Of a stretch of DNA of 64,000 bases, positions 11,048 to 53,242 are shown piece by piece (positions within the stretch are counted from its first letter, which is position 1; each line of letters begins with the position of its first letter). Location: positions 639,406,001-639,470,000 of the forward strand of contig NW_027362762.1 in NCBI RefSeq assembly GCF_046119375.1. Reading direction: 5' to 3'. The notes beneath the pieces were generated by a model. The model did not search any database. It had not been told where the DNA came from and saw only the letters and a program-made list of their open reading frames with translations. A program made the translations under genes and the position numbers. The DNA comes from Phyllobates terribilis. Its lineage: Eukaryota.

Positions 11048-14000
11048 TTATCCCATGTCACGCGTGATGCCGCGGATTCTGCGTGCAAGCTGTATGTCCT
11101 TTGCGTAGAGAGTGACTCTCTTGGCATGGAGACTGCACTGGTAGGAGTCTTCAAGGAGCCGCACGAGGAAGGCCTCAGCTGCCTGCGGATACAGGAAAAG
11201 GTATGAGCATTAAAGCATTCTGAATAATGAATGTGTACACATGAGGATTAACACTAGTTTAGGCCATTATATAACTTTTATGCAGCATTTTCACTGGTTT
11301 CCCCTCTGAGGTTTCTCTGATTTTCAGTTTTTGCTGAGCTGGTGGGTGGAGATTAGCTGCTATGATGCCTCACATACACAGCAGATACAGACATGAGGAA
11401 TTCCTGCTCTCCTGTTTATATATACAGAACATGTTAAAAAGCATCAGCAACATGCAGGATATTAAAATGCAGTACTAAGCAGTGCAGCTGTGAATCCAGT
11501 ACTGCACTAGAAAGCAGCATCACATTCTCTGCCTCCCCTTTTTATATATTCCAAGAGTAGCTGTAATCTGATCCCTCAACAAATACATGCAGCGTGATGG
11601 CTCAGTGGTTAGCACTGCAGCCTTACAGTGCTGAGCTCCTGGGTTTAAATCCCACCAGAGACTCCATTTGCAAAGAATTTGTATGTTTGTTTCTTGTATT
11701 TGTATGTTCTTCCTGTCTTTGCGTGGGTTTCTTCTGGGTCCTCCAGTTTCCTCCGACACTCCAAAGACACAATGATAAGGGATTTAGATTGTGAGCCCCA
11801 GTGGGGACAGTGATGATGTATGTAAAGTACTGCGAAAGATGATGGCAAGGAAAAATAAATCTACATTCCTCAAAATTGAAATTGCAACACCAAAACAGAA
11901 AAGTTGTGGAATTATAGAAATGAAAGGATGGATAGACACATGACAGATATGCAGACATCTCAGTTTATTCAGTATTGAGCGCCATATCCAGAAATTCCCG
12001 AACTTACACCTATTGGCTGCTATCAATAAGGTTATTAATGGTTGTCTCAGGAATGTTCTGCCAAAGCAGAATGCTCTTCGGCAAATCATCAAAGTCCACT
12101 GCTGGCAGATCTCCTTGCAATTGTCAACTAATGATGTCTCAGATGTGCTCAATGGGAGACAAGTCTGGAGACGCTGCAGGCCAACGCAGCATTTTTGGGT
12201 TACTCCAAGCAAAATGTGGCCTGGCTTTGTAATGTTGAAAAAATGTCTCATGAGAAGCTTTATTGAGAAATGACTGTACCACTGGTTCCATAACCAAATC
12301 AATGTAACACTGAGCTGTTAGTTTACGTGTAATGAAGACTACAAGTGTCTGGATAGTGTACATTATGCCATCCCACACCATAATCCCTGAAGTAGGACCA
12401 GTGTGACCTTACACTCATGAAGGCCTCTTCCCATGAGGATATCTGCAGGTTAATAAAGTTATTAACCTGCCCTGTGCAAGCACTTAGCCGAACGCTAAGG
12501 GGAGAAATTTAACTTTATTCCCCCCACAGCATTCAGGTTTCAGTGACAGGGGTGACGCCAGTTTAGTCACAGCTCTGAGCATACAGGGAAGCGGCTGTAA
12601 CCGTGCCCTCGGCACTGCCTGACAGCCGGCCTCAATGCAGAGTGAGTGTCAGTCAGGGCCAAGAACATGATTACAGCCGCCGCTCTGTGCACTCAGAGCA
12701 GTGACTGAACCCGGAACGCTGCCGGGGGTAATAAAATCAAATTTCTCCCTGCGGTGTTCGGCCAAGTGCGGGCACCGGCAGGTTAATTAACCCCATATCT
12801 ACAGGTTAATAGCGTTTTTTTCTGGGGACAGATTCTCTTTAATAACCTCATTGAAAGCAGCCAAGGCTTTAGGAACATGGGTTCCTGTGCTCAGACTAGA
12901 TGCTGCATAAGTTGAGATGTTTTGAAACTTTTGCTTTGATTTTTTCATCATTTGCACATCAGTAACGTGTATCCATCCTGTGATTTCCATGACTCCACCA
13001 CTTTTCCTTCTTCGTGCTACAATTTCAATGTTGAGTGTATTTTATAGGATGCTTTATATGCAGTACTTAACAACCCTATTCATAAGCATATTGGTATAAT
13101 GGAGGGTGGCCCTACTCAGCCCCCAATTACTTATCGTGTCCAAGCATTAGGACGGTATACTGACCTCCTGTAGCGCTGTTAGTGCTGTGCTTTGCCAGGA
13201 GTACGGCATGCCGCAGGAATACTCCAGGCAGATCTCTCTCACCTAAAGGAATGAAAGGAAATAAGACTTTTCCTACTGATCACTAAAAACGAAAGACCCA
13301 TTACAGCAGCCACCAAGATCAAATCCACTCACCAGTTTGGCAAATGGGAGTCTCCGGATGAGCAGCTCCGTCGACTTCTGGTACTTTCTTATTTCCATCA
13401 GCGCTCGAGTTCGCTGAGAGCAGCGTCTTCTCCGTGTAGGAGCCACCTCTTCACCCCTTCCTAGTTTGTTCGAAAAGAATACATCACAGCTTTAATGCTT
13501 CTTGCAATTATCACAGGGGGGCACTTTATACAGATTCATACATGACATAGAGTTATAATCCAAAAATCGGATCAATATTAAAGTTTATTGGTACAAAAAA
13601 ATTGAAACAAAATCGGGTCAAAGACATATATCACACAATATAAAAACATTCAGAAATAGCAAGGACACAGGTGTTTGTAGCTTCTGGTCCACTTATTATA
13701 TTGGGCAGGGGTGGTATGCAACCTTAGTGTCAAAAATCGTCACATCCCCAATTAGTGGCATGAGCCGGTGATTAGATTACATCACCATTATATCACTTCG
13801 GAGTACTGACAAAAGATCAATCATCATTTAGTATATCTACAAATATCTCATTAAATTGCTCTACCCTATAAAGTGCTGGTGCATTTAAAGTAAATTAGGA
13901 CATATATCACAACACATACGCCAATAAGCTGATCCATGTAGCCCCGGCCAGGGTCACATGCAGCAGCACACAGATAGTGTTGTTCACACAATCAAATGGG

Positions 14001-16295
14001 GGAACCATAGTCACAAGTCAAGGAGGCAACCTTACCCATAATGTAACCCAGTGGACACAAGCTAACAGCTAATTTACTTTAAAGAAGTTGTCCACTACTT
14101 TATATGAACCCCCCAATGTATCCCCCCGGGGTCCAGAAGTATTTTTATAAATACCTTGCAATACCTTTTGTGCCTCTGAGCGGCGGGTCACGTGATACCT
14201 GTGAGCGGTTAGTGATAGCGCCGCTCACAGGCAGAAAAGGCACCACAAGGTATTTAGAGAAACACTTATGGGCCCTGGGGGAATACATTGGGGGATCATA
14301 TAAAGTAGTGGACAACCCCTTTAAATGCACCAGCACATTATAGGGTACTGCAATTTAATGAGATATGTGTAGATATACTGAATGATTGATTTTGTGCCAT
14401 TTCTGGCTTTTTTATATTGTGTGATATACGTCTTTGGCCCAATTTTGTTTAAAGTTTATTGGTACAAAAAAAATAATTATGATCAGATTTTTGGATTATG
14501 ACTCCATATCTCTTATCAGAACTGAAGTTTTCTAGTGGAATATCCACTACAGCCTGCATCATTTGGGCAATAGGCTGTATTAATATATTCATGACAATTG
14601 TGAATCTGTTTTGGATGATATTGATTCTAGATTCATACATGAGCTCAGGAAAGTATTAAATAATGAGAGTCCTCAGTGGTTCATACCTTTTAATGGCTAA
14701 CTAAAAAGATGGTGACAAATAGCAAAAACCGAGAGGGTTCCAGCATCCGCCAATGATTAGAAGCTTAAAACATGACTTTTCATGAAAACTAAGATTTCAC
14801 AGCTTGAAACGCATAGACCAGTGTCCTTTTTATCTTCCTCCCCCATGTCTCCCCCATCCCCTTCCCCAACTTCATTGATATGTTTTTGCAAAAAAAACCT
14901 TTTTTTGTCCTTTTTCATTAAAAGTCTTGTTTTACATTTCTAATCATTGGTGGATGCTGGAACCCTCTCGTTTTTTCCTCTGCTACTGCCCAGCTGCCGC
15001 TCTGAAGTCCGTACACCACATTCTTCATATGGAGGCTTCAAACCATCTGTACTTGAAGAGCTGAACATTTCCTTTTCCCCTCTCCCATGATTTTTTAACT
15101 CACATATTTATACACAACAGAAAACAGGGATAATGCAGAAATAAGACAAGTGATGGGAAGCAGAACTATCAATGTGAGAAACAGTTGTGGCAGTAAATAT
15201 TGAGGCAGATCATAGATAAGGAGCGTGATAGTTTTATTGTCCTCTGATTGAGGTCTGTTCCAGAGTTGTGATACCCCCAAATGGTCTGAGGGGCACATTT
15301 CTTAAACGATGTAGAAAGACATAAATTCATGCGACACATTCATGCCTGCTCTGAGTGTGTCACTTGTTGTCATAAGTTTGTACTCCCAGACTCTCTTGTC
15401 TCTCTGTGGTGGGAAATGTGAAGTTACCGTTCAATACCAGCATCTCCCTGAAGAGTCTGGGAGTAGAAACTTATAACAAATGACAAACTGAGAGCAGGAA
15501 TGAATGTGTCACATGAATTTATATCTTTCTACATCAATTAAGGAATGTGTTCCTCAAACTATTTGGGGGAATCACAACCCTGGACCAGACCACAATCAGA
15601 ACGCAATAAAACTATCACACTCCTTATCCATGATCTACTCCATTATTTACTGCCACAGCAGTATCTCTGCGTCCCACATTGGTAGTTCTGCTTCCCGTCA
15701 CTTGTCTTATTTCTGCATTATTATTGTGTCCTGCTGTGTATAAATATGTGACTCCTCAGATTTTATGTTCTACTGAGCCTGATGAAGAGACCTGAGTAAT
15801 CTAGAAAGCTGCCATTAAAAGATATTAACCACTGAGGACTCTCAATCTTTAATATTTTTCTAGCTACATGGTACAAAGTTATGTTTCCTATATACGAGCA
15901 CGGTCATCCTGCATACATCAGCACAACCTGCTCCCCCTAGTGGCTGCAGAAAAGTTTGCATCTGCGTGCATAGACATTAGGATTTAAAAAAGATGCAATT
16001 GTGTTTTACCTGGGGACAACTGAGAAGTTGAGGGCCCTTCAAATTCTGGTGCTTTACGGAAGGACAGGCGCATTTTACTCTGGGGAGATTGAGAAGTTGA
16101 GGGCCCTTCAAATTCTGGTGCTTTACGGAAGGACAGGCGCATTTTACTCTGGGGAGATTGAGAAGTTGCAGAACTCTTTCTCTGAGGAGACTGAGAGGTT
16201 GAAGGCCTTGTACTTTGGGAGGATGGAGAAGCTGCAGTCCTCTTTTGTGGCTGCTTCAACTTTCTGCGGTGTTGAGGGCTCTGCTGATTTTTCAT
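11048..16295 (-). CDS. cenpa: CENP-A (cenH3) centromeric histone H3 variant, copy 1; 4 coding exons, 208 aa, intact
   Basis: Exons on the minus strand: 16295-16010 (286 nt), 13460-13333 (128), 13242-13165 (78), 11182-11048 (135 including TAA). Total 627 nt. All introns are GT-AG with phases 1,0,0. As I recall them, the phases and the 78/135-nt exons match human CENPA. Protein: [208 protein letters not shown]. The cenH3 diagnostics versus H3 are present: Q68->A, F84->W, T107->S and a loop 1 two residues longer. Confidence 0.95.
11589..11850 (+). mobile_element. tRNA-derived SINE (V-SINE-like, L2-type tail) in CENP-A intron 3
   Basis: Box A TGGCTCAGTGG at 11598-11608 and box B GGTTTAAATCC at 11642-11652. 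V-domain-like core gcgtgggtttc...ctccagtttcctcc...ctccaaagac, and 3' part tagattgtgagccccagtggggacag. Confidence 0.8.
11930..12390 (-). pseudogene. Old degenerate Tc1 transposase relic in CENP-A intron 3
   Basis: The ORF at 12139-12381 retains MVW.GI, LTAQ.YID.V.EPVV and [14 protein letters not shown]. The FQQDNARPH motif has decayed to FQHYKARPH. Confidence 0.85.
13546..14628. mobile_element. Insertion with inverted arms, flanked by a 14-bp direct repeat (retroelement relic, possibly Penelope-like), in CENP-A intron 1
   Basis: AGATTCATACATGA at 13532-13545 and 14629-14642. Arms ~13548-13890 and ~14320-14500 are reverse complements in blocks. The family assignment is inference. Confidence 0.5.
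14083..14320. mobile_element. TTAA-flanked foldback MITE (T2/Kolobok type), 238 bp
   Basis: TTAA at 14079-14082 and 14321-14324. TIRs AG(aa/gg)GTTGTCCACTACTTTATATGA. The interior is palindromic. Confidence 0.8.
14724..14976. mobile_element. Foldback MITE-like element with ~65-bp inverted arms
   Basis: aaaaaccgagagggttccagcatccgccaatgattagaa... pairs with ...ttctaatcattggtggatgctggaaccctctcgtttttt. Confidence 0.65.
15098..15855. mobile_element. ~650-bp hairpin (15098-15753) followed by a hammerhead-like core; probable Penelope-like element relic
   Basis: 15098-15345 is the reverse complement of ~15502-15753, with inner arms also pairing. CTGATGA at 15779-15785 and GAAA at 15804-15807. 15809-15853 is an inverted copy of 14654-14698. 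Confidence 0.6.
16021..16168 (-). repeat. Perfect 69-bp (23-aa) in-frame tandem duplication inside CENP-A coding exon 1
   Basis: 16021-16089 equals 16090-16158, followed by a 10-bp partial third copy. It encodes [23 protein letters not shown] twice. Also at 34496-34643 and 52968-53115. Confidence 0.95.
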
Positions 16296-16354
16296 GATGT
16301 AAAATGTTGAGACACAATCAAAGCTGCAAACAAGACAATTCAACAGGATCATAA

Positions 16355-16710
16355 ATTATTATTATTATTTATTATTATAAGCGCCATGGAATAAATGGCG
16401 CTTACATGTGAAAAAGGGGTATACGTAATAAAAACACTTCCAATAATATTGAAAAAAAGAGTCAGCGACTGGTACAGGAGGAGAGAGGACCCTGCCCGCG
16501 AGGGCTCACAATCTACAAGGGATGGGAGAGGATACAGTAGATGAGGGTAGAGTTGGTAGTGCAGCGTTATGGTGGAGCGGTGGTTACAGCAGGTTGTACG
16601 CTTGTCGGAAGTGGGTCTTCAGGTTCCTTTTGTAGGTTTCCATGGTAGGCGAGAGTCTGATATGTTGGGGTAGAGTGTTCCAGAGTAAGGGAGATACACG
16701 GAAGAAATCT
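16355..16710 (-). mobile_element. L2-clade LINE 3' end with (AAT)n tail, ~60 bp upstream of the CENP-A ATG
   Basis: Translation RDFFRVSPLLWNTLPQHIRLSPTMETYKRNLKTHF matches the L2 ORF C-terminal motif (R.F...P.LWN.LP..IR......FK..LKT). It is followed by a 3' UTR and an (att)n tail on the plus strand. Confidence 0.8.
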
Positions 16711-19700
16711 CGGTAATCAGTGGCCACTAGACCAGAGTCCTGTGAACTACCTCTTCTAATTAGTAGGCCCTGTGGGGTAATTACATTGTGTCGCAATGTA
16801 GGCATGATGTTGAGGGGGACTCCTAAGCAGAAGAGGTGTTGGGAATGTCACGAGTAGCAGAAGGCTTGCAGGGTTGTGGTCCAGCAGGCACTAAGGTGCA
16901 GCGAATCTGTTTGTGAAACTGTTTAACCTCATATACCTTTGCAAAAGTTCTCAGGTCTCCTGTCTGGAGGAGTTGTAAGAATTGTCAGAAGTCTGGCCCA
17001 TCCTCTAATAAGGAGCAGAGAAGATGAGATAAGACACGCAGGGCCACGTCACATGGGATTATCTCACTGAGAGGCTATGTTCACATGTTGCGTAACTTTT
17101 GCTGTGTTTTTTATTCAAATTAAAAGGCTGCTTTTCACGGTATCAGCAAAGTTAAAAGATTTCAGAAATATAATTCACAGGCTTGTTTTTTTCCACAACT
17201 ATATTGGAAAACTGCTGCGTTTTTTAAAACTGCAGCATGTCAATTCTTTCAGCATTTTTTCATCCATATAAAGCAATCAGTTTTTGTAGTGATTTTGTTT
17301 GAAAAAAATATATACAGGTACAGCAAGATGTGAAACACATTTATTTTGGGGATTTTCTTAAATTTGTGTCTTGGTATCCTCAAATGAGCATGGTTGTTAG
17401 TATTAGTACAGTTTACTTTAACACATACCACAAATTTAATTAAACAATGTCTGACCAACTCAATGCCCTACCAATGTGTGAGTGTCCTACCAATGTCTGA
17501 AAGTAAACAATGCCCTACAAATGTGTTAGGTTAAAAGTGGGCACCACACAGCCAGCACCACGTACAGTGGGAACCATGCGGATGGTAGCTTGATCCAATC
17601 ACTGCTGGTTAACCATTAAATGGCACTGTAACCCCTGACAGGCATTTATGTGGCACAGTCCTGGGGCCGTCTCCGTTCCTTCCCCATGATCCGATATCGG
17701 AGAGCTGATGTGCCACCATGGCAGCTGGGGCCCTGCTGATGCCACTGTTGCCGCCTTCTTGATACTCGTGTACAGCTGAGCCACAAGGGCCACATACGAG
17801 GCCGTGATCGCCACATACTGAAGTCCCGCACTATATACAACATTTCATGAGCACAGATGGAAGGGATAGAAAAGTAAGTAATAAATTCCCACCGCCTCCA
17901 TTTTCCTTGTTTAAAAATCCCCAAGTTATGAAAAATAAGAAGAATATCTGGTAACACTGAGCAAAACCATTCCCAGGACCCCGGAGTAGTGGCCCGGCTA
18001 CTGCCTCACTAGCTGCCGGCATCCCTGGAGCCTCTTAGGACTAGTAGGCCAGAACAGCCATTGCAGAGACCCGGGGGTGGAGCAGGTAGGGGGGCTGGCA
18101 TGGAGCCTCTACAGCACGGCCCTGACACTATTTTGCCCAATGCTAATATCTGGCATCACATATAAAGCCTCATGTAGCAGAATAACACCAGTAGGCGGTG
18201 CTGACACCCACGATTGTTTGCTGTGGATGTACAGTGTGAACGGAGCCGCTGAGCGCAGATCTGGGGGCGGAGTTGCGGCCGCTGCCGGGAACCACTGCTT
18301 TGTGCGCTGCAGTAACCACGGGAGGCCAGCAGAGGCCGCCACAGCCTGAGCGAGGCCCAGCAGCTCCAGTGTAAAATGACAGCTTATCTGTGAGGAGTCG
18401 GGTGGGAGTTGTAGTCCCACACGCTGCAGACCTCTGCTGCATAGAGTGGTGGGCACGTACAGGCAATCCCCCCGGTAATCCCCCCTCACCAGTCAGGACG
18501 CGTCTATCTCCTGCCGACAAGTTTCCACCTACGGCCCGCGCGCTGCTGCTTAGGAAACGGGGAGGGGCTTACATCCAGCCAATAGCTGCGGCCCATTTTT
18601 TCTCTCGTCTCAATAGACTTTATTGTACAAGACAATGAGAACATTATTCTGGAAGAGGAGATACAAAAATACACTGAGCCTATGGGGGTGACTGGCAGGG
18701 CGGGGGCCCAGAGAGTTGCCTGCTGTGGCACAGGTCAGGGAAGGAAGGTGCACGCTTCTATGGGGGGCACACATTCTCCCCCAGAATGCCTCAGGCCTCT
18801 TTCACACGTCAGTATTTCCGGTACGAGTGGTGACAGTTTCCACACATACCGGAGACACTGACACACGTAGACCCATTCTAATCTATGGTCTGCGCTCATG
18901 TCAGTGCGTTTCCACGGACCGTATGTCCCACACATAGACATGTCCGTTTTTGGCCGGCAGCACGGGTCACACGGACCCATTCAAGTCAATAACTCCGTGT
19001 AAACACGTACCGCACATGGATTTCTTCTGTGTGACACGTACCGGCACCTGAGAATCAGCGTACAGTTAGCGCTGTTCCCGAGCGCTGGGTGCTGAACGCT
19101 GCCCTCATCATGGTTCCCTGCGATCAGCACCAACAGGGACAATGATGAGAGTAGTAGTGTCTGCTCCCGCAGTGTCCAACTGTAAAAATAAGAACAAAAT
19201 TTAAATTACTCACCTGTCCTAAGTGTCCCCTGCTGTAATCCATCCCTGCAGTGAGCGGGCCCCGCAGCTGTGCTCTGCGAGTGACAGGATAGCGCTCAAT
19301 GAGCTCAGCGCAGCTTCGGGGTCCACTCACTGCAGGAGTCAGTCTCCTCGGTGTGAGCGATCGTATGGATTACAGCGGGGGACACTTAGGATTTTATTCT
19401 TATTTCTACACCAGGTCACAGCGGGAGCAGAATACTTCTCTCCTCATTGTCCCTGCTGGTGCTGATTGCAGCGCAAGCAGGGGACAATGATGAGGGCAGT
19501 GTTCGGCACTTGGAAACAGCGCTAACTGTACCACTGATTCCCAGGCGTCAATACATGTGTTCCTGATGCGGCACATGGTTGCCACGTGTATGTGTGGCGC
19601 CCCTGAGGGTACAGTCGCCACAGAGGTATTGCATCTCACCCAGAGGTGTGGTATCCCACTCTCAGGTAAGGATAGAGTGCTGCCCAGGACCCTAACACCT

Positions 19701-22700: not shown

Positions 22701-23688
22701 GGTGCCAGGACAAAGCATGATGACTCAAAAGAAAAAAAGTCTATGCGACTGTATGAATTATTCACAGGTGAAAAATATGTATAATCCTTACTCCGAGGAT
22801 TCATTATCTGCCACACATCTGTCAGTCGGAGGGAATGGAGGACCCGCTTGAGAGAACGCAGATGTCTTACTGGAACTATTCCCCTCCCAGAGGAAGAATC
22901 CTCCGGCAGATTAAAAGTGAACTTGAAGTCTCCACCTGCAATCAACGTGACGTACCCTCTGTAAAATTAGAGAGTGATGCTAGGAAGGAGCGGCAGGAAG
23001 AGATCTGACCCTTATTAGGAAGGTACCAATTAGCTGTGGTATAAAATGAATTTGCAGTCTTTAATTTGTGAAATATGTATCTGCCTTGATCTTCTGTAAG
23101 TGTATCAATGAGAGAAAATCCTAGTGACTTATGGACTGCAATTGAAACACCATTAGATTTTTACTCTGCATTAGTACTATGGAACCAATTAGTGAAATAT
23201 CTGTTCTTTATTTTAGGACTATGTTCAGATTTAAAGTGTGTCTCTTGTAATAAAAGAATATGAACCCTTTTTTATGCATAGTATAGAGGATCTGTGAGCG
23301 TTTTTGAGGAATATTAAAGCCTCGAACATTAAGTGAACTGATTTTAACAGAGGTCATATCTGGGACCAGGGAAAAAAGTAGGGAAAGTAAAAAAGGAGAG
23401 AAAAAAAGGAAAGAAGTAAGAAAAGAACAGAATCCCTAACCAATCAGGAATGACTCCCTCCAGAAACCAATGGAGAATAGTCTCCCTAACCACCAGGGAA
23501 TTCCCCAAAAATGGAAAGACAATGGAGGGGAGAAAAAAAATTCCACATCCGTCCAGCACAGCATAGATCCCCTTAGCGGAAGCGAGCTTTCTAAAGAGGG
23601 TAACATCCCCCTTAGGGCCTAACCACAGGCCCTATACAGCATAAGAATAAAACACTTTAAGACGCATAAGATATTTAACTTGAATATA

Positions 23689-25337
23689 CAGTCATATGAA
23701 AAAGTTTGGGCACCCCTATTAATCTTAAGCTTAATGTTTTATAAAAATTGGTGTTTTTGCAACAGCTATTTCAGTTTGATATATGTAATAACTGTTGGAC
23801 ACAGTAATGTTTCTGCCTTGAAATGAGGTTTATTGTACTAACAGAAAATGTGCAATCTGCATTCAAACAAAATTTGACAGGTGCATAAGTATGGGCACCC
23901 TTATCATTTTCTTGTATTAAATACTCCTACCTACTTTTTACTGACTTACTAAAGCACTTTTTGGGGTTTTGTAACCTCATTGAGCTTTGAACTTCATAGC
24001 CAGGTGTATGCAATCATGAGAAAAGCTACTTAAAGTGGCCACTTGCAAGTTGTTCTCCTGTTTGAATCTCCTCTGAAGAGTGGCATCATGGGCTCCTCAA
24101 AACAACTGTCAAATGATCTGAAAACAAAGATTATTCAACATAGTTGTTCAGGTGAAGGATACAAAAACTGTCTCAGAGATTTAACCTGTCAGTTTCCACT
24201 GTAAGGAACATAGTAAGTAAATGGAAGAACACAGGCACAGTTCTTGTTAAGGCCAGAAGTGGCAGGCCAAGAAAAACATCAGAAAGGCAGAGAAGAAGAA
24301 TGGTGAGATCAGTCAAGGACAATCCTCAGACCATCTCCAGAGAGCTGCAGCATCAACTTGCTGCAGATGGTGTCACTGTACATCGGTCAACTATACAACG
24401 CACTTTGCACAAGGAGAAGCTGTATGGGAGAGTGATGCGAAAGAAGCCGTTTCTGCAAGCACGCCACAAACAGAGTCGGCTGAGGTATGCAAAAGCACAA
24501 TTGGAGAAGCCAATTTTTTTTTGGAAGAAGGTCCTGTGGACTGATGAAACCAAGATTGAGTTGTTTGGTCATACAAAAAGGAGTTATGCATGGCGGCAAA
24601 AAAACACAGCATTCCAAGAAAAACACTTGCTACCCACAGTAAAATTTGGTGGAGGTTCCATCATGCTTTGGGGCTGTGTGGCCAATGCCGGCACCGGGAA
24701 TCTTGTTAAAGTTGAGGGACGCATGGATTCCACTCAGTATCAGCAGATTCTTGACAATAATGTTCAAGAATCAGTGATAAAGTTGAAGTTACGCAGGGGA
24801 TGGATCTTTCAGCAAGACAATGATCCAAAACACCGCTCAAAATCTACTCAGGCATTCATGCAGAGGAACAATTACAATGTTCTGGAATGGCCATTCCAGT
24901 CCCCAGACCTGAATATCATTGAACATCTGTGGGATCATTTGAAGAGGGCTGTCCATGCTCGGCGACCATCAAACTTAACTGAACTGGAATTGTTTTGTAA
25001 AGAGAAATGGTCAAAAATACCTTCATCCAGGATCCAGGAACTCATTAAAAGCTACAGGAAGCGACCAGAGGCTGCTATTTTTGCAAAAGGAGGATCTACT
25101 AAATATTAATGTCACTTTTCTGGTGAGGTGCCCATACTTATGCACCTGTCAAATTTTGTTTGAATGCAGAGTGCACATTTTCTGTTAGTACAATAAACCT
25201 CATTTCAAGGCAGAAACATTACTGTGTCCAACAGTTATTACATATATCAAACTGAAATAGCTGTTGCAAAAACACCAATTTTTATAAAACATTAAGCTTA
25301 AGATTAATAGGGGTGCCCAAACTTTTTCATATAACTG
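23689..25337 (+). mobile_element. Full-length Tc1 DNA transposon, IR/DR type (1,649 bp), in U2
   Basis: TA TSD at 23687-23688 and 25338-25339. 211-bp TIRs (23689-23899 and 25127-25337, 2 mismatches) with outer and inner TGGGCACC direct repeats. U1 (~6861-6870) and U4 show the empty site. Confidence 0.97.
24088..25109 (+). pseudogene. Tc1 DD34E transposase with a single -1 frameshift
   Basis: ATG at 24088 gives MGSSKQLSNDLKTKIIQH...GEGYK. The reading frame is lost at the A-run near 24162-24167 and continues LSQRF...GRPRK into the 269-aa ORF (WTDETK, QQDNDPKH, SPDLNIIE; exactly 34 residues between the second D and the E). Restoring one base gives 340 aa. Confidence 0.93.
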
Positions 25338-28300
25338 TATATATCCATATCATGTGTAGATATATACCAACCCATATACTGTATATCAGGGGTCTCAAAC
25401 TCGGCTAAGTATATGGGCCGCACAGAAAAAATGTGAATTTGAAGGGCCACATTCATTGCAGAGTGATATTAAATTTTTAATGGTACCAAATTGTTTTTTC
25501 TATACACCTTTTGGATCATTTTTGGGCTTTTTTATTTTATTCTTTTACATGGCATTCATTTTATGGGCTATGGTACAGTTTTACAGTTTTTACAATTTTT
25601 ATTTCCCCTAATTGGTAACATACAGTGATTTGTGTTCTTACAATTTGCACCATATAGTAATTCTGACCAACTTCTCATAGTAATGTCTCCATCGTGTAGT
25701 AGTTTTCCCATCTCGTGGTAATGTCCCCATCCTGGTCCCCATCTTGCAGTAATGTCCCCATCCTTGTCCGCATCTTGTAATAATGTCCTCCATCTTGGTC
25801 CCCATCTTGCAGTAATGTCCCCATCTTGTAATAATGTCCTCCATCTTGGTCCCCATCTTGTAGTAATGTGCCCATTCTGGTCCCCATCTTGTAGTAATGT
25901 ATCCATCTTGTAGTAGTTTCCCCATCTTGTAGTAATGTCCCCATCCTGGTCCCCATCTTGCAGTAATGTCCCCATCCTTGTCCGCATCTTGTAATAATGT
26001 CCTCCATCTTGGTCCCCATCTTGTAGTAATGTGCCCATACCGGTCCCCATCTTGTAGTAATGTGCCCATACCGGTCCCCATCTTGTAGTCATGTTACAAC
26101 TGCCAGCAGGTTATAACAGCCCACCGAGTCCTGTGTCCTCCGGGGAAGTGATCCAGCCAACTCTCAGGTAACTTGAGTGCACTTGATCGGGACCCCATTC
26201 TTGTGTACCTTTCTCGGGTCGTCTCTCTCTGCGCTGGCTTTCGCCCTCCTGCCCTGCGCCTCACACACAGTGTCCCGAGCCAGTGGCCGCAGGCCTTGTC
26301 CTCTCTGTCCTATATGGCCACCTTTTCAGCGAATGTGTGTGGTTTTGGCTACGGCACTTAGAGATACCGCAGCCTCCGGTTTGCTAGTTGAGTCTTGCAG
26401 TCCTCCACTAGTCTGGGGCCGGTCCCCTACTGTGACCTGATCCCTTCTCCCGACTACGGTCGGTGTGAGTTCGGGCGCACGGGTGGACTCCGCACTTCCC
26501 GTGGCCCTAGGATCCCTTCTCTGTCTCTGGAGCCCTTCTCTGACTCCCTCGCTCCTCTCATTCTCTCTCCTACTGGGCCCCTCTAACTGGGTCCTCACTC
26601 TGTCTGGACTCTACTCCTCAATGGTCCTCACTCACTGGGCGCTTCTAGATGTTTCTACCTGTCTTTTTATACTGTCTGTCATGTGACCCACGTCACTAAC
26701 TGTCACTCTACGTGGTCCCCTCTACCTTCAGTCATTCCTTGTGTGCTCCCTTAAACTACTTCCTCCACCCACTTCCTCTACCTAGTTCCCTCCTCCAGAC
26801 AGGGACAGGGACTGTGCTCTCCCTCAAGAACAATCTCGCCCTTCCCTACTGGAGTGATGTGGTGTTGGATGTGGGTGTGTGGGTCCTGGGTAGTGCTCCC
26901 TCCTTACCCGAGAGTGGGGTACCACACCTCTGGCTGAGATGCAGTACCTCTGTGGCGACTGGACCCGCAGGGGCGCCACACTCACCTAAAGAGGGCACCA
27001 GGGCTGAAGATGATTTTAGCAACTGTATGGGAGACAAGAACCTGTTGGGCCTTATCCAATCTACCAGACTGTAAATATTGTAATTACTCCTTTCCCCCAA
27101 GTAAAACCCCAGTTATGGTTAATAACTTTGTGTCCTCTGAAATTATGACTGCCCTGGTCCCAGAAGAGAAATGTTTGGAGACAGCCACGACCGGATGGTG
27201 TGAAGTAAGTGAAGAATGTCACATGCACTGCCACACATCAGAGGGAGGACACGAATTGTCTGCAAGGAGCCAAAAAGAGCAGGGGCCACAACTCGCCCAC
27301 GACTACCTCGCTGGGGCACCTTACAGGCCAATGCTGGTCCTTAACTTGTAGAACATTCAACTGAAAAGAATCACGGATTTCGGCGGCCCTCAGAACCAGG
27401 TCGTAATCATTACGGGGGCTCCGGTGCCTGCTGGCCTCATTAAGCAGCCTCAGGGGCCGTATGCGGCCCTCGGGCCGCATATTTGAGTCCCTTGCTGTAT
27501 ATGAACATACATACAAGCAAACCTAGGCCTGTTACCAAACAGTGAACTTGAAACTAGATAGATGTTCTGAACTGATTACTATAGAGGACTATCAACCTCC
27601 TATACAACATAGCTTATTCCTGTTTGAGAGGTATTGGAATGAAGAGGGAAATAAAAAATCACTCAAATACAAAAGACCAATCAGTCTGGAGGAGAAGGGT
27701 CAGATTATCTCTAGAATTGTGACTCAATTTTTGCTGGGGACGAGGCACATCTTCCATCCCAGGGCCTACAGGTAGGTCTGGCCAGTCCGATGATGACACT
27801 GAAACAAGAGGCAAACCAAGTCCTGCAGTAAACGCCGTAAATCTCCCATGCAGAGCTGAACATGTAAAGTACCAGAATGACGTACTTGTAGACAGAAGGG
27901 AAAACCCCATGAATAAAGAATTTCTTGATGTCGCAATATGTCCAATAAAGGTCTCAGAGCTCTTCTCTTTTGTAGAGCGTGGTGTGATAGATCATGTTTA
28001 ACATGTTCCTGGTAGGTTATAGAATCCATCCCACGGGCCTTATTAAGAATATTTTGCTTCACTTTATATCTTACAGACACGGCGATACCAATTAGGTGTA
28101 CTTTTTTGTTTAGTTTTTTTTAATTACAAACGCTGCGTTTTGAGTGCCAAAATGGTTTTTCGTGATTTGTGTACGTTTTTTTTTTTACATATTTTAACTT
28201 TTTTAAAATTTTTCCCTGTGGGACATGTATAATTTTTACTTTGATTTCTGGTCTCATACACTGCAGTGCATGAGAGCAGTCAGCGAGTCACTGACTCACC

Positions 28301-32500: not shown

Positions 32501-34770
32501 GCAACCTTACCCATAATGTAACCCAGTGGACACAAGCTAACAGCTAATTTACTTTAAAGAAGTTGTCCACTACTTTATATGAACCCCCCAATGTATCCCC
32601 CCGGGGTCCAGAAGTATTTTTATAAATACCTTGCAATACCTTTTGTGCCTCTGAGCGGCGGGTCACGTGATACCTGTGAGCGGTTAGTGATAGCGCCGCT
32701 CACAGGCAGAAAAGGCACCACAAGGTATTTAGAGAAACACTTATGGGCCCTGGGGGAATACATTGGGGGATCATATAAAGTAGTGGACAACCCCTTTAAA
32801 TGCACCAGCACATTATAGGGTACTGCAATTTAATGAGATATGTGTAGATATACTGAATGATTGATTTTGTGCCATTTCTGGCTTTTTTATATTGTGTGAT
32901 ATACGTCTTTGGCCCAATTTTGTTTAAAGTTTATTGGTACAAAAAAAATAATTATGATCAGATTTTTGGATTATGACTCCATATCTCTTATCAGAACTGA
33001 AGTTTTCTAGTGGAATATCTACTACAGCCTGCATCATTTGGGCAATAGGCTGTATTAATATATTCATGACAATTGTGAATCTGTTTTGGATGATATTGAT
33101 TCTAGATTCATACATGAGCTCAGGAAAGTATTAAATAATGAGAGTCCTCAGTGGTTCATACCTTTTAATGGCTAACTAAAAAGATGGTGACAAATAGCAA
33201 AAACCGAGAGGGTTCCAGCATCCGCCAATGATTAGAAGCTTAAAACATGACTTTTCATGAAAACTAAGATTTCACAGCTTGAAACGCATAGACCAGTGTC
33301 CTTTTTATCTTCCTCCCCCATGTCTCCCCCATCCCCTTCCCCAACTTCATTGATATGTTTTTGCAAAAAAAACCTTTTTTTGTCCTTTTTCATTAAAAGT
33401 CTTGTTTTACATTTCTAATCATTGGTGGATGCTGGAACCCTCTCGTTTTTTCCTCTGCTACTGCCCAGCTGCCGCTCTGAAGTCCGTACACCACATTCTT
33501 CATATGGAGGCTTCAAACCATCTGTACTTGAAGAGCTGAACATTTCCTTTTCCCCTCTCCCATGATTTTTTAACTCACATATTTATACACAACAGAAAAC
33601 AGGGATAATGCAGAAATAAGACAAGTGATGGGAAGCAGAACTATCAATGTGAGAAACAGTTGTGGCAGTAAATATTGAGGCAGATCATAGATAAGGAGCG
33701 TGATAGTTTTATTGTCCTCTGATTGAGGTCTGTTCCAGAGTTGTGATACCCCCAAATGGTCTGAGGGGCACATTTCTTAAACGATGTAGAAAGACATAAA
33801 TTCATGCGACACATTCATGCCTGCTCTGAGTGTGTCACTTGTTGTCATAAGTTTGTACTCCCAGACTCTCTTGTCTCTCTGTGGTGGGAAATGTGAAGTT
33901 ACCGTTCAATACCAGCATCTCCCTGAAGAGTCTGGGAGTAGAAACTTATAACAAATGACAAACTGAGAGCAGGAATGAATGTGTCACATGAATTTATATC
34001 TTTCTACATCAATTAAGGAATGTGTTCCTCAAACTATTTGGGGGAATCACAACCCTGGACCAGACCACAATCAGAACGCAATAAAACTATCACACTCCTT
34101 ATCCATGATCTACTCCATTATTTACTGCCACAGCAGTATCTCTGCGTCCCACATTGGTAGTTCTGCTTCCCGTCACTTGTCTTATTTCTGCATTATTATT
34201 GTGTCCTGCTGTGTATAAATATGTGACTCCTCAGATTTTATGTTCTACTGAGCCTGATGAAGAGACCTGAGTAATCTAGAAAGCTGCCATTAAAAGATAT
34301 TAACCACTGAGGACTCTCAATCTTTAATATTTTTCTAGCTACATGGTACAAAGTTATGTTTCCTATATACGAGCACGGTCATCCTGCATACATCAGCACA
34401 ACCTGCTCCCCCTAGTGGCTGCAGAAAAGTTTGCATCTGCGTGCATAGACATTAGGATTTAAAAAAGATGCAATTGTGTTTTACCTGGGGACAACTGAGA
34501 AGTTGAGGGCCCTTCAAATTCTGGTGCTTTACGGAAGGACAGGCGCATTTTACTCTGGGGAGATTGAGAAGTTGAGGGCCCTTCAAATTCTGGTGCTTTA
34601 CGGAAGGACAGGCGCATTTTACTCTGGGGAGATTGAGAAGTTGCAGAACTCTTTCTCTGAGGAGACTGAGAGGTTGAAGGCCTTGTACTTTGGGAGGATG
34701 GAGAAGCTGCAGTCCTCTTTTGTGGCTGCTTCAACTTTCTGCGGTGTTGAGGGCTCTGCTGATTTTTCAT
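29523..34770 (-). CDS. cenpa: CENP-A (cenH3), copy 2; intact, with one E->Q substitution
   Basis: Exons 34770-34485, 31935-31808, 31717-31640, 29657-29523. Coding sequence reads identical to copy 1 except position 31642 (c->g on the plus strand), which changes the last codon of exon 3 from GAG to CAG (LQE->LQQ). Confidence 0.94.
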
Positions 34771-40700: not shown

Positions 40701-42163
40701 CCTTCCCTAGGCCTACTGTTGCCAGACAGCTGGAATCTGGTGACGCAGCTGGTGACTAGTCAAGAACCAAGGTGAGTACCACTGCAAGAACCCGAGGAAG
40801 TAAAACCAGACGAGAAAATGAGAAAACCCCTGAAAAGTTAGCAAGACTAATGCTAGCACCACTCACCACCATGCACATAGGGAACTGAAATAAACAGCAA
40901 AGGACTGAGCAGGGAGCAGGGTTATATAGCCTGCTTAATGATCAGGTACTGAATACCTCCCAATTATCCCCAGACAACCACTTCCTGCTAGCTTCAACAG
41001 CCGACTGGACAAAATTTCACCATTGCTTAGTACAGGACAAAACAGCGTCCTGTGTTGCCTGGCAACCGGGGAAGACAGCGTCCCATCTTCCCTGGGAGAG
41101 AAATCAGGAAGAGAAAGGGATAAAAAAAAATCGGAGCATGATCTGACCACAATATATCTCCGATTGATGCCTCAGGGTGCCAGGACAAAGCATGATGACT
41201 CAAAAGAAAAAAAGTCTATGCGACTGTATGAATTATTCACAGGTGAAAAATATGTATAATCCTTACTCCGAGGATTCATTATCTGCCACACATCTGTCAG
41301 TCGGAGGGAATGGAGGACCCGCTTGAGAGAACGCAGATGTCTTACTGGAACTATTCCCCTCCCAGAGGAAGAATCCTCCGGCAGATTAAAAGTGAACTTG
41401 AAGTCTCCACCTGCAATCAACGTGACGTACCCTCTGTAAAATTAGAGAGTGATGCTAGGAAGGAGCGGCAGGAAGAGATCTGACCCTTATTAGGAAGGTA
41501 CCAATTAGCTGTGGTATAAAATGAATTTGCAGTCTTTAATTTGTGAAATATGTATCTGCCTTGATCTTCTGTAAGTGTATCAATGAGAGAAAATCCTAGT
41601 GACTTATGGACTGCAATTGAAACACCATTAGATTTTTACTCTGCATTAGTACTATGGAACCAATTAGTGAAATATCTGTTCTTTATTTTAGGACTATGTT
41701 CAGATTTAAAGTGTGTCTCTTGTAATAAAAGAATATGAACCCTTTTTTATGCATAGTATAGAGGATCTGTGAGCGTTTTTGAGGAATATTAAAGCCTCGA
41801 ACATTAAGTGAACTGATTTTAACAGAGGTCATATCTGGGACCAGGGAAAAAAGTAGGGAAAGTAAAAAAGGAGAGAAAAAAAGGAAAGAAGTAAGAAAAG
41901 AACAGAATCCCTAACCAATCAGGAATGACTCCCTCCAGAAACCAATGGAGAATAGTCTCCCTAACCACCAGGGAATTCCCCAAAAATGGAAAGACAATGG
42001 AGGGGAGAAAAAAAATTCCACATCCGTCCAGCACAGCATAGATCCCCTTAGCGGAAGCGAGCTTTCTAAAGAGGGTAACATCCCCCTTAGGGCCTAACCA
42101 CAGGCCCTATACAGCATAAGAATAAAACACTTTAAGACGCATAAGATATTTAACTTGAATATA

Positions 42164-50900: not shown

Positions 50901-53242
50901 GGGTCACATGCAGCAGCACACAGATAGTGTTGTTCACACAATCAAATGGGGGAACCATAGTCACAAGTCAAGGAGGCAACCTTACCCATAATGTAACCCA
51001 GTGGACACAAGCTAACAGCTAATTTACTTTAAAGAAGTTGTCCACTACTTTATATGAACCCCCCAATGTATCCCCCCGGGGTCCAGAAGTATTTTTATAA
51101 ATACCTTGCAATACCTTTTGTGCCTCTGAGCGGCGGGTCACGTGATACCTGTGAGCGGTTAGTGATAGCGCCGCTCACAGGCAGAAAAGGCACCACAAGG
51201 TATTTAGAGAAACACTTATGGGCCCTGGGGGAATACATTGGGGGATCATATAAAGTAGTGGACAACCCCTTTAAATGCACCAGCACATAGGGTACTGCAA
51301 TTTAATGAGATATGTGTAGATATACTGAATGATTGATTTTGTGCCATTTCTGGCTTTTTTATATTGTGTGATATACGTCTTTGGCCCAATTTTGTTTAAA
51401 GTTTATTGGTACAAAAAAAATAATTATGATCAGATTTTTGGATTATGACTCCATATCTCTTATCAGAACTGAAGTTTTCTAGTGGAATATCCACTACAGC
51501 CTGCATCATTTGGGCAATAGGCTGTATTAATATATTCATGACAATTGTGAATCTGTTTTGGATGATATTGATTCTAGATTCATACATGAGCTCAGGAAAG
51601 TATTAAATAATGAGAGTCCTCAGTGGTTCATACCTTTTAATGGCTAACTAAAAAGATGGTGACAAATAGCAAAAACCGAGAGGGTTCCAGCATCCGCCAA
51701 TGATTAGAAGCTTAAAACATGACTTTTCATGAAAACTAAGATTTCACAGCTTGAAACGCATAGACCAGTGTCCTTTTTATCTTCCTCCCCCATGTCTCCC
51801 CCATCCCCTTCCCCAACTTCATTGATATGTTTTTGCAAAAAAAACCTTTTTTTGTCCTTTTTCATTAAAAGTCTTGTTTTACATTTCTAATCATTGGTGG
51901 ATGCTGGAACCCTCTCGTTTTTTCCTCTGCTACTGCCCAGCTGCCGCTCTGAAGTCCGTACACCACATTCTTCATATGGAGGCTTCAAACCATCTGTACT
52001 TGAAGAGCTGAACATTTCCTTTTCCCCTCTCCCATGATTTTTTAACTCACATATTTATACACAACAGAAAACAGGGATAATGCAGAAATAAGACAAGTGA
52101 TGGGAAGCAGAACTATCAATGTGAGAAACAGTTGTGGCAGTAAATATTGAGGCAGATCATAGATAAGGAGCGTGATAGTTTTATTGTCCTCTGATTGAGG
52201 TCTGTTCCAGAGTTGTGATACCCCCAAATGGTCTGAGGGGCACATTTCTTAAACGATGTAGAAAGACATAAATTCATGCGACACATTCATGCCTGCTCTG
52301 AGTGTGTCACTTGTTGTCATAAGTTTGTACTCCCAGACTCTCTTGTCTCTCTGTGGTGGGAAATGTGAAGTTACCGTTCAATACCAGCATCTCCCTGAAG
52401 AGTCTGGGAGTAGAAACTTATAACAAATGACAAACTGAGAGCAGGAATGAATGTGTCACATGAATTTATATCTTTCTACATCAATTAAGGAATGTGTTCC
52501 TCAAACTATTTGGGGGAATCACAACCCTGGACCAGACCACAATCAGAACGCAATAAAACTATCACACTCCTTATCCATGATCTACTCCATTATTTACTGC
52601 CACAGCAGTATCTCTGCGTCCCACATTGGTAGTTCTGCTTCCCGTCACTTGTCTTATTTCTGCATTATTATTGTGTCCTGCTGTGTATAAATATGTGACT
52701 CCTCAGATTTTATGTTCTACTGAGCCTGATGAAGAGACCTGAGTAATCTAGAAAGCTGCCATTAAAAGATATTAACCACTGAGGACTCTCAATCTTTAAT
52801 ATTTTTCTAGCTACATGGTACAAAGTTATGTTTCCTATATACGAGCACGGTCATCCTGCATACATCAGCACAACCTGCTCCCCCTAGTGGCTGCAGAAAA
52901 GTTTGCATCTGCGTGCATAGACATTAGGATTTAAAAAAGATGCAATTGTGTTTTACCTGGGGACAACTGAGAAGTTGAGGGCCCTTCAAATTCTGGTGCT
53001 TTACGGAAGGACAGGCGCATTTTACTCTGGGGAGATTGAGAAGTTGAGGGCCCTTCAAATTCTGGTGCTTTACGGAAGGACAGGCGCATTTTACTCTGGG
53101 GAGATTGAGAAGTTGCAGAACTCTTTCTCTGAGGAGACTGAGAGGTTGAAGGCCTTGTACTTTGGGAGGATGGAGAAGCTGCAGTCCTCTTTTGTGGCTG
53201 CTTCAACTTTCTGCGGTGTTGAGGGCTCTGCTGATTTTTCAT
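47998..53242 (-). CDS. cenpa: CENP-A (cenH3), copy 3; intact
   Basis: Exons 53242-52957, 50410-50283, 50192-50115, 48132-47998. Same protein as copy 1. Intron 1 is 3 bp shorter. Confidence 0.94.

What the first reader, a model, noticed from the sequence alone, without database searches (positions are those of the whole stretch)
16010..16295. Greatly extended N-terminal tail built by internal duplication, with an SQ/SP cluster
Seen in sequence: exon 1 codes 95 aa, giving ~110 aa before the histone fold. It holds a perfect 69-bp/23-aa duplication plus older TSQSPQ-like repeats, with 5 SQ and 6 SP dipeptides. All expansions keep the frame and the phase-1 junction. Established: vertebrate CENP-A tails are typically ~45-55 aa; SQ is the ATM/ATR consensus and SP the CDK/MAPK consensus; cenH3 tails evolve fast. 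Inference: the tail may be a new phospho-regulated or DNA-packaging module. The duplication predates the array amplification because all three copies share it.
Basis: partly seen in the sequence, partly recalled or inferred. Interest (0 to 1): 0.72.

Follow-up and report, generated by a model that had tools for sequence, protein, structure and literature searches.

The report
Recently lengthened CENP-A paralogue tail
The stretch is the first coding exon of a transcribed extra copy of the centromere histone CENP-A in the golden poison frog; most of its long tail is inherited from poison-frog ancestors, and only the last 23 residues come from a very recent 69-bp repeat that four of the six neighbouring gene copies carry.

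Summary
Window 16295-16010 (minus strand) is a 286-nt coding exon of 95 codons plus one base. It holds a perfect 69-bp tandem duplication, 5 SQ and 6 SP. Identical copies lie at 34485-34770 and 52957-53242. Contigs from four runs that look like RNA splice this exon to exon 2 exactly as predicted.

- **What the gene is.** It is a divergent CENP-A paralogue of Phyllobates terribilis, already annotated in RefSeq. It sits in a six-copy tandem array, apart from the syntenic canonical gene.
- **Most of the tail is inherited.** Ordinary frogs have 50-56 residues before the histone fold. Ranitomeya canonical CENP-A already has 92, including one copy of the 23-residue unit. Only the step from 92 to 115 is specific to this gene.
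- **The duplication does not predate the array.** The two array copies just beyond the window (185 aa) lack it, and two intron SNPs co-segregate with it.
- **How it arose.** The duplicated unit is bounded by a 10-bp direct repeat supplied by the older STSQ motifs, which points to slippage or unequal exchange.
- **The kinase-site argument is weak.** SQ density is no more than composition predicts, and SQ is absent in R. variabilis. The tail is predicted to be disordered.

Nothing supports a new phospho-regulated or DNA-packaging module. This is a new instance of fast cenH3 tail evolution, of moderate interest.

The parts
16010..16295 (-). Coding part of the first coding exon of array gene 1: 95 codons plus 1 base, phase-1 donor CAG|GT at 16010/16009. 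This is the finding itself.
   Evidence: The splice joint 16010 to 13460 is seen in contigs of 4 runs.
16100..16168 (-). 69-bp unit, copy A (23 codons)
   Evidence: perfect identity to copy B; period 69.
16031..16099 (-). 69-bp unit, copy B
   Evidence: It is absent from array copies g4 and g5.
16021..16030 (-). 10-bp direct repeat (CAACTTCTCA) that also begins each unit. It is the microhomology that bounds the duplication.
   Evidence: 79 matching positions, that is 69 plus 10.
16296..16323 (-). 5' untranslated part of the same exon. An AG acceptor lies at 16325-16324, so a non-coding exon lies further upstream.
   Evidence: RNA contigs stop aligning at 16324 with 29-97 further letters. The canonical genes have the same acceptor context.
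13333..13460 (-). Coding exon 2: end of the tail and the alpha-N/alpha-1 start.
   Evidence: Pfam Histone, E=1.1e-8; joints.
13165..13242 (-). Coding exon 3: 26 codons, alpha-1/L1 with the CENP-A-type longer loop and Trp.
11048..11182 (-). Coding exon 4: alpha-2 end, alpha-3, C-terminal tail, and the stop codon at 11050-11048.
34485..34770 (-). Identical exon 1 of array gene 2 (CDS 29523-34770). This copy carries an E to Q change at 31642.
52957..53242 (-). Identical exon 1 of array gene 3 (CDS 47998-53242).

Best explanation
The stretch encodes most of the intrinsically disordered N-terminal tail of a divergent, transcribed CENP-A (cenH3) paralogue of Phyllobates terribilis. The gene lies in a six-copy head-to-tail array. 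The units are 16.8-22.8 kb long and about 99.9% identical. The array is on scaffold JBJBSG010000002.1, whereas the syntenic canonical CENP-A lies on JBJBSG010000007.1. The array founder was a DNA-level segmental copy of the CENP-A locus and kept its introns.

The tail was built in layers.
1. Expansion of [K/R][K/R]-x-S-T-S-Q-S-P-Q-like modules, plus an R-K-x-P-E-[F/Y]-E-G-P-S-T segment, in the common ancestors of poison frogs. This took the tail from about 52 to about 92 residues. It is shared with Ranitomeya canonical CENP-A and with the 185-aa array copies.
2. One very recent in-frame 69-bp tandem duplication, taking the tail from 92 to 115 residues. It is bounded by a 10-bp direct repeat supplied by two of the older STSQ motifs, so replication slippage or unequal exchange is the likely cause. 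It happened in one array member after the array already had at least two lineages. It then spread to four adjacent copies (g0-g3) by further unit duplication or conversion.

**Shown:** the anatomy, the copy distribution, the splicing, the homology and the predicted disorder.

**Inferred:** the direction of the change (gain rather than loss), the slippage mechanism, and that the extra unit is neutral or at most a modest increase in dosage of a short linear motif, not a new functional module.
For: - **Gene identity.** Pfam Histone, E=9.5e-36. The best solved relatives are CENP-A (6e-39 to 4e-36) ahead of H3 (4e-33 or weaker). RefSeq proteins XP_073526764-6 and XP_073525237 (208 aa) and XP_073526767-8 (185 aa) are all named histone H3-like centromeric protein A.
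- **Placement.** The window maps at 100% identity onto the assembly.
- **Array.** Six gene places were found. The array ends 1.4 kb 3' of g0 and 2.6 kb 5' of g5.
- **Differences between copies.** Over 6 kb the copies differ by 7 substitutions, a 3-bp indel and the 69-bp duplication. The duplication is in g0-g3 only, and 2 linked intron SNPs go with it.
- **Outgroup state.** The unit is single in Ranitomeya, and the unit's sequence is recognisable in Anomaloglossus exon 1.
- **Tail lengths.**
- **Canonical locus.** L007 is collinear with R. variabilis L008. The array unit is collinear with both, from about 2.3 kb upstream to at least 0.7 kb downstream of the stop.
- **Age of the paralogue.** dS is 0.30 and 0.31 to the two canonical genes, against 0.198 between them. 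On the array branch dN/dS is about 0.5, against 0.11-0.15 on the canonical branches.
- **Transcription.** Spliced contigs in 4 runs carry all three introns removed at my predicted sites. Contigs break exactly at the edges of the 79-nt repeat. One 99-nt contig (16021-16119) carries the copy A/copy B junction.
- **Disorder.** Residues 1-105 (apart from 11-16 and 31) have pLDDT below 50 and there is no secondary structure before residue 111.
- **Restricted tail homology.** Only dendrobatoid CENP-As match the tail.
Against: - Direction is inferred by parsimony. A deletion through the same 10-bp repeat in the ancestor of g4 and g5 would give the same pattern.
- Exon 1 is not evolving neutrally: dN/dS is 0.37 against Ranitomeya. 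The PE[F/Y]EGPST segment is conserved across dS of about 0.4. Doubling it could therefore matter.
- The runs are only guessed to be RNA and come from one study. Tissue is unknown. Contigs cannot show whether the 185-aa form is also expressed, or how expression compares with the canonical gene.
- The junction contig has only 20 letters on one side, fewer than the 31 the tool asks for.
Confidence: 0.72

Rival explanations
1. One reading: the lengthened tail is a newly evolved functional module. The SQ/SP cluster would be regulated by ATM/ATR and CDK/MAPK, or the tail would be a DNA-packaging extension, and the duplication was fixed because it adds sites.
For: - 5 SQ in 95 residues formally meets the usual SQ/TQ-cluster density.
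- SP is slightly enriched (p=0.03).
- Each unit adds one R-x-S, one SQ and one SP. That these are kinase consensus sites is my own knowledge.
- Exon 1 dN/dS is 0.37, which shows constraint.
- The duplicated form is transcribed.
- cenH3 paralogues elsewhere differ mainly in their tails and are often germline-specific (PMC7475650).
Against: - SQ is not above composition (p=0.14). It is not conserved: R. variabilis 0, R. imitator 2, while canonical P. terribilis has 5 without the duplication.
- Two of the six otherwise near-identical copies lack the extra unit, so it is not fixed in the array.
- The two units show zero divergence, so there has been no time for selection to be visible.
- K+R is 22%, lower than in most of the other frog CENP-A tails compared (20-33%; ten of sixteen at 29-33%). 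The unit has a net charge of only +2. This does not resemble a protamine.
- The tail is predicted to be disordered.
Confidence: 0.13
2. The two-unit form is ancestral to the whole array. Copies g4 and g5 then lost one unit secondarily, by deletion between the 10-bp repeats.
For: - The same microhomology allows deletion as easily as duplication.
- Array units clearly exchange or rearrange. The Tc1 element is present or absent in a pattern that does not nest with the duplication.
Against: - It needs two events rather than one.
- The outgroup state is a single unit.
- g4 and g5 share two further private SNPs in intron 1 and sit together at one end of the array. This fits a simple split into two lineages, one of which gained the unit.
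Confidence: 0.12
3. Assembly artefact or dead gene: the duplication or the extra copies are mis-assembly, or the paralogue is a decaying pseudogene.
For: - The copies are about 99.9% identical, which is typical of regions where assemblers err.
- dN/dS on the array branch is raised, to about 0.5.
- The conserved RYRPG motif before alpha-N is replaced, and the C-terminal DGLG has become RDMG.
Against: - All six copies have intact frames and canonical splice sites.
- The copies are told apart by SNPs, a 1.65-kb Tc1 element and 4.3-kb insertions.
- Spliced transcripts exist with zero mismatches, and the contig break pattern is specific to the duplication.
- dN/dS is still below 1. By my rough count, about 22 non-synonymous against 14 synonymous changes lie on the array branch, where about 27 against 9 would be expected if neutral.
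Confidence: 0.03

Closest known systems
Canonical CENP-A of Ranitomeya variabilis and R. imitator (XP_077139496, XP_069604733; 185 aa)
   Same: - Same four coding exons and the same phase-1 exon 1.
- Exon 1 has 73 codons and holds one copy of the unit (R-K-S-P-E-Y-E-G-P-S-T).
- The tail is 92 residues.
   Different: - The unit is present once, not twice.
- The histone fold is conserved (dN 0.024 to the P. terribilis canonical gene), whereas the array gene has dN of about 0.11.
- The gene is single and sits at the syntenic locus, next to a 375-aa EamA/NIPA-type gene.
Canonical P. terribilis CENP-A (XP_073495690; 180 aa; locus L007)
   Same: - Same species, same exon structure and the same donor and acceptor contexts.
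- It has its own in-frame tandem repeats of the [10 protein letters not shown] module (about 33 bp, three copies) in exon 1.
- It has 5 SQ.
   Different: - It lacks the [10 protein letters not shown] segment.
- It is single-copy, on another scaffold.
- It keeps RYRPG and the IQDGLG C-terminus.
Cid/CenH3 paralogues of Drosophila and mosquitoes; HCP-3/CPAR-1 of C. elegans
   Same: Duplicated centromeric histones whose main differences lie in a modular, fast-evolving N-terminal tail. One copy evolves faster (PMC7475650; PMC7306699).
   Different: - Those are dispersed single paralogues in invertebrates, with shown germline-biased expression and centromere localisation.
- Here the paralogue is a six-copy tandem array in a vertebrate, with tail length differing between array members.
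- Tissue specificity and localisation are untested here.
Bovid CENP-A duplicates (Li and Huang 2008, as cited in PMC7306699)
   Same: Extra CENP-A copies in a vertebrate.
   Different: Those are reported to be mostly pseudogenised. Here all copies are intact, contain introns and are transcribed.
Human CENP-A tail phosphorylation (Ser7 by Aurora kinases, Ser16/Ser18; my own knowledge, not tested here)
   Same: A short basic tail with R-x-S and S-P sites. The frog modules contain the same kinds of minimal motif.
   Different: There is no sequence homology between the tails. No phosphorylation data exist for the frog protein.

Membership tests
CENP-A / cenH3 | H3-type histone fold | tested here: met
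   Pfam PF00125 at E=9.5e-36 for the RefSeq protein identical to the window's product. Exons 2 and 4 taken alone give 1.1e-8 and 1.1e-13. AlphaFold predicts helices 111-131, 134-146, 152-183 and 191-201.
CENP-A / cenH3 | Closer to CENP-A than to canonical H3 or H3.3 | tested here: met
   PDB search: CENP-A chains score 6e-39 to 4e-36 and align to the very C-terminus. The best H3 scores 4e-33 and most score about 3e-29. The tree places the protein inside the frog CENP-A clade.
CENP-A / cenH3 | Loop 1 longer than in H3 and containing Trp (part of the CATD) | tested here: met
   Exon 3 has 26 codons with G-M-P-Y-S-W-Q. It aligns without gaps to the CENP-A L1. H3 chains cover 111 query residues with 106 of their own.
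CENP-A / cenH3 | N-terminal tail unrelated to the H3 tail and fast-evolving | tested here: met
   The tail finds only dendrobatoid CENP-A proteins, both in the exhaustive search and in the word search.
CENP-A / cenH3 | Descent from the CENPA locus | tested here: met
   The array unit is collinear with the canonical loci L007 and L008 in promoter, exons, introns and 3' flank. It is a paralogue, not the syntenic orthologue.
CENP-A / cenH3 | Hydrophobic C-terminal tail that binds CENP-C (frog consensus G-I-Q-D-G-L-G) | tested here: inconclusive
   The array protein ends G-I-T-R-D-M-G. The length and the I/M hydrophobic positions are kept, but D-G-L is changed.
CENP-A / cenH3 | Centromere localisation and HJURP-dependent loading | not testable with these tools
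   This needs cytology or chromatin profiling.
SQ/TQ cluster domain (ATM/ATR substrate region) | At least 3 SQ/TQ within about 100 residues (definition from my own knowledge) | tested here: met
   5 SQ in 95 residues. This is no more than the composition gives (shuffle p=0.14).
SQ/TQ cluster domain (ATM/ATR substrate region) | Conservation of the sites among orthologues | tested here: not met
   SQ counts in tails: R. variabilis 0, R. imitator 2, D. tinctorius 3, canonical P. terribilis 5.
Protamine-like or DNA-packaging basic tail | Strong enrichment of Arg/Lys | tested here: not met
   K+R is 22% of the tail, against 29-33% in the ordinary frog CENP-A tails compared. The added unit has 4 basic and 2 acidic residues.

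The most novel reading that the evidence does not exclude
The array encodes a specialised cenH3, for example one biased to the germline or meiosis, retained since before the Phyllobates-Ranitomeya split. Under this reading, tail modules (R-x-S, SQ, SP and the conserved PE[F/Y]EGP motif) are being tuned in number by in-frame unit duplication. One locus would then supply two tail isoforms (185 and 208 aa). This would be a vertebrate counterpart of the Drosophila Cid paralogues, with copy-number amplification added.
Probability: 0.2. Interest if true: 0.65.

Novelty: new member of a known kind. Interest (0 to 1): 0.4.

Why it matters
CENP-A is usually treated as a single-copy gene in vertebrates, and its tail as short. 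This case shows stepwise growth of the tail within one frog superfamily, from about 52 to 69-73, then 87-92, then 115 residues. The latest step is caught in progress: near-identical neighbouring gene copies differ by exactly one 23-residue unit, and the microhomology that produced it is still visible.

That gives a natural pair of isoforms for testing what cenH3 tail length and its short motifs do. It also corrects the order of events: the array came first and the duplication followed. The feature adds no new mechanism. The proteins are already in RefSeq, though I found no paper on CENP-A in poison frogs.

Tried and rejected
- **Resemblance to bacterial cadherin repeats.** The exhaustive search with exon 1 gave weak hits (E about 1e-5) of [12 protein letters not shown] to repeats in long bacterial proteins. 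Pfam shows these are cadherin/RTX-type repeats, and the match is a 12-15-residue motif. I rejected it as chance.
- **Lookups that found nothing.** The look-up of encoding contigs returned nothing for the D. tinctorius X2 isoforms or for R. variabilis X2. I could therefore not test whether R. variabilis X2 is the orthologue of the array gene.
- **Tree resolution.** The protein tree cannot place the array gene within Dendrobatidae. A species-specific duplication is only borderline disfavoured (AU p=0.054). A clade with R. variabilis X2 is not rejected (p=0.49).
- **Neighbour gene.** I tried to read the neighbour gene's first exon from L008 to see whether the array unit keeps a coding piece of it. 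No clear exon was found and I dropped it.
- **Earlier findings.** The search of earlier findings near the place gave nothing.
- **Limits of the read data.** No DNA run and no raw-read RNA run was available. Strand, transcript starts, expression level, tissue and expression of the 185-aa form are all untested.
- **Joined model.** I did not build or search a joined spliced model from the window's letters. Searches were exon by exon, or used the RefSeq proteins returned by the tools (P0122, P0011, P0013). dN/dS was counted on per-exon codon lists with the split codon left out.
Full report
**1.

On the minus strand an ATG at 16295 opens a frame of 95 codons. One further base (G at 16010) follows, then a CAG|GTAAAA donor. 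The exon is 286 nt, so the junction is phase 1. A script found a perfect 69-bp tandem duplication at 16168-16100 and 16099-16031. Ten more identical bases follow at 16030-21. Tandem Repeats Finder agrees, with period 69 and 2.4 copies. The 95 residues hold 5 SQ and 6 SP. The whole exon recurs exactly at 34485-34770 and 52957-53242.

**2. The gene**

Three further coding exons lie downstream on the same strand. They are 13460-13333, 13242-13165 and 11182-11051, with the stop codon at 11050-11048. All have canonical AG and GT sites.

- Exons 2 and 4 match Pfam Histone.
- Exon 4 matches solved CENP-A best.
- The predicted product has 208 residues.

**3. Identity and place**

Searching with exon 1 alone found CENP-A of Dendrobates tinctorius. 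Searching with that protein returned three Phyllobates terribilis proteins:

- a 208-aa protein identical to the window's product (P0122, three RefSeq accessions), plus a one-residue variant of it (P0011);
- a 185-aa protein that is the same except for having only one 23-residue unit (P0013);
- a 180-aa protein on another scaffold (P0004).

Locus L003 matches window 44770-19523 at 100% identity. The window is therefore JBJBSG010000002.1:639406001-639470000 of assembly GCA_046119375.1.

**4. The array**

Six gene places exist, at spacings of 21.2, 18.5, 18.5, 16.8 and 22.8 kb:

| Copy | Position | Product |
|---|---|---|
| g0 | before the window | 208 aa |
| g1-g3 | in the window | 208 aa (g2 carries E to Q at 31642) |
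| g4, g5 | just after the window | 185 aa |

Unit homology stops 1.4 kb 3' of g0 and 2.6 kb 5' of g5, so six is the full count in this assembly.

Over a 6-kb gene alignment the copies differ by 7 substitutions, one 3-bp indel and the 69-bp duplication. The duplication is present in g0-g3 and absent in g4 and g5. Two intron-1 substitutions show the same split. The array already had two lineages when one of them gained the unit, or, less parsimoniously, when the other lost it.

The unit starts with the same 10 bases that follow the second copy. Those bases come from two of the older S-T-S-Q motifs. This is the signature of slippage or unequal exchange between short direct repeats. I infer that from the sequence.

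**5. Transcription**

Four runs from one study hold contigs with zero mismatches. The runs are guessed to be RNA and are kept as contigs. Their joints are 11181/13164, 13237/13328 and 13459/16009. After the tool's stated cut shifts, these are exactly my three introns, with GT..AG on the minus strand. Non-repeat intron bins are empty, which fits cDNA.

Exon 1 is fully covered. Contigs break exactly at the edges of the 79-nt repeat: the pieces are 16139-16324, 16090-16168, and 42 letters at the joint. A k-mer assembly does this only if the tandem junction is present in the reads. One 99-nt contig (16021-16119) carries that junction, although with only 20 letters on one side.

The single-unit form has no k-mer of its own, so its expression cannot be judged from contigs. 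Contigs also stop aligning at 16324, just after an AG, with 29-97 letters left over.

**6. Related frogs**

An alignment of 14 frog CENP-As and a count of residues before the L.EIR.YQ motif give these tail lengths:

| Group | Tail length (residues) |
|---|---|
| Bufo, Rhinoderma, Mixophyes, Spea, Pelobates, Pyxicephalus, Nanorana | 50-56 |
| Anomaloglossus | 69 |
| D. tinctorius | 73 |
| P. terribilis canonical | 87 |
| Ranitomeya variabilis and R. imitator canonical | 92 |
| Array, 185-aa form | 92 |
| Array, 208-aa form | 115 |

Ranitomeya exon 1 has 73 codons, is phase 1, and contains the unit once. The unit's sequence is even recognisable in Anomaloglossus exon-1 DNA. About four fifths of the 'greatly extended tail' is therefore ancestral to poison frogs.

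The tail has no relatives outside Dendrobatoidea, in either the exhaustive search or the word search.

**7. Origin and age of the paralogue**

L007 (the P. terribilis 180-aa gene) is collinear with the R. variabilis locus L008, including the upstream flank next to a 375-aa EamA/NIPA-type gene. It is therefore the syntenic orthologue. The array unit is collinear with both loci, from about 2.3 kb upstream to at least 0.7 kb downstream of the stop. The array founder was thus a DNA-level segmental copy.

Over the 95 histone-fold codons:

| Comparison | dS | dN |
|---|---|---|
| Array vs P. terribilis canonical | 0.30 | 0.115 |
| Array vs R. variabilis canonical | 0.31 | 0.112 |
| The two canonical genes | 0.198 | 0.024 |

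Three-point branch estimates give dN/dS of about 0.5 on the array branch, against 0.11-0.15 on the canonical branches. The paralogue lineage is therefore probably older than the Phyllobates-Ranitomeya split. It evolves faster but not neutrally. The array amplification itself, at about 0.1% divergence, is very recent or homogenised.

The protein tree is consistent with this but weak. A species-specific duplication gives AU p=0.054. A clade with R. variabilis X2 is not rejected.

Exon 1 also shows constraint. dN/dS is 0.37 for the single-unit array form against Ranitomeya.

**8. The functional claims**

- SQ is not enriched beyond composition (p=0.14). SP is marginal (p=0.03). Both come from the iterated T-S-Q-S-P-Q motif.
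- R. variabilis has no SQ at all, while the canonical P. terribilis tail has 5 without the duplication.
- Basic content is 22%, below that of other frog tails.
- AlphaFold gives pLDDT below 50 for nearly all of residues 1-105 (only 11-16 and 31 are above) and no secondary structure before residue 111.

Nothing points to a new module. Each unit does add one R-x-S, one SQ, one SP and the conserved P-E-F-E-G-P patch. A dosage effect on short motifs therefore remains possible, but it is inference.

**9. Comparison with what is known**

CenH3 paralogues that differ mostly in their tails are described in Drosophila, mosquitoes and nematodes. In Bovidae the extra copies are mostly dead. I found no paper that links CENP-A with poison frogs, and none of the frog papers returned by the paralogue search was about CENP-A duplication. 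The P. terribilis genome paper does not mention centromere proteins.

The feature is a new vertebrate instance of a known kind of evolution, already present as RefSeq models.

**10. Verdict**

The best reading is a recent slippage-type in-frame duplication in the disordered tail of an expressed, amplified CENP-A paralogue. It arose during the growth of the array, not before it.

Noticed in passing
window 23684-25342 (also about 42160-43815); absent at 6863/6864 and 60634/60635: A 1.66-kb Tc1/mariner-type element with 216-bp terminal inverted repeats (99% complementary). It has a 269-aa ORF (24300-25109) matching HTH_Tnp_Tc3_2 and DDE_3. It is present in some array units and missing in others, which explains the 16.8-kb and 18.5-kb unit lengths. 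Its pattern does not nest with the 69-bp duplication, so units have exchanged or the element has moved.
   Followed up: partly
window 31642 (gene 2, last codon of exon 3): The only coding substitution among the six array copies is GAG to CAG (E to Q), in A-L-Q-E-A-A-E-A-F. It gives RefSeq XP_073525237.
   Followed up: yes
window 16324-16400 and upstream: RNA contigs stop matching at 16324, after an AG acceptor, and carry 29-97 further letters. A non-coding 5' exon therefore lies upstream. The frame stays open upstream of the ATG, and R. imitator isoform X1 (233 aa) reads in from such an exon.
   Followed up: partly
window 18013-18636: Each array unit keeps about 600 bp homologous to the region upstream of canonical CENP-A, next to the EamA/NIPA-type neighbour gene in R. 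variabilis. The original duplicated segment therefore included the promoter region.
   Followed up: partly
window 12142-12408 (intron 3 of gene 1): A Tc1-like transposase remnant (D-D-E region motif) lies inside the intron. Several intron bins show very high depth in the RNA-like runs, typical of repeats.
   Followed up: no
L007:10100-10205 (canonical P. terribilis CENP-A exon 1): The canonical gene has its own in-frame tandem repeats of about 33 bp, coding [10 protein letters not shown] three times. Tail expansion by slippage has thus happened independently in both paralogues.
   Followed up: partly
L010:10001-10280 and 18036-18340 (Anomaloglossus baeobatrachus): Two near-identical exon-1 copies lie 8 kb apart. 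RefSeq models of 227-237 aa splice one into the other, doubling the whole tail. The species also has 162-aa CENP-A genes on two other chromosomes. The models are unverified.
   Followed up: partly
protein hits: Other frogs also show multiple CENP-A proteins. Rhinoderma darwinii has clusters with 9, 11 and 32 member sequences. Mixophyes fleayi, Nanorana parkeri and Pseudophryne corroboree have two each, and D. tinctorius has two genes on one contig. CENP-A amplification may be recurrent in large frog genomes.
   Followed up: no
L005:5157-9539 and L001:5158-10000 (outside the window): Insertions of about 4.3 kb lie upstream of array genes g0 and g4. They explain the 21.2-kb and 22.8-kb spacings. 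Their content was not examined.
   Followed up: no
window 25568-26092: Overlapping minus-strand ORFs are made of a tandem peptide repeat (G-D-Q-D-G-D-I-T-T-R-W-G-P-like). This is probably a minisatellite in the spacer, not a gene.
   Followed up: no
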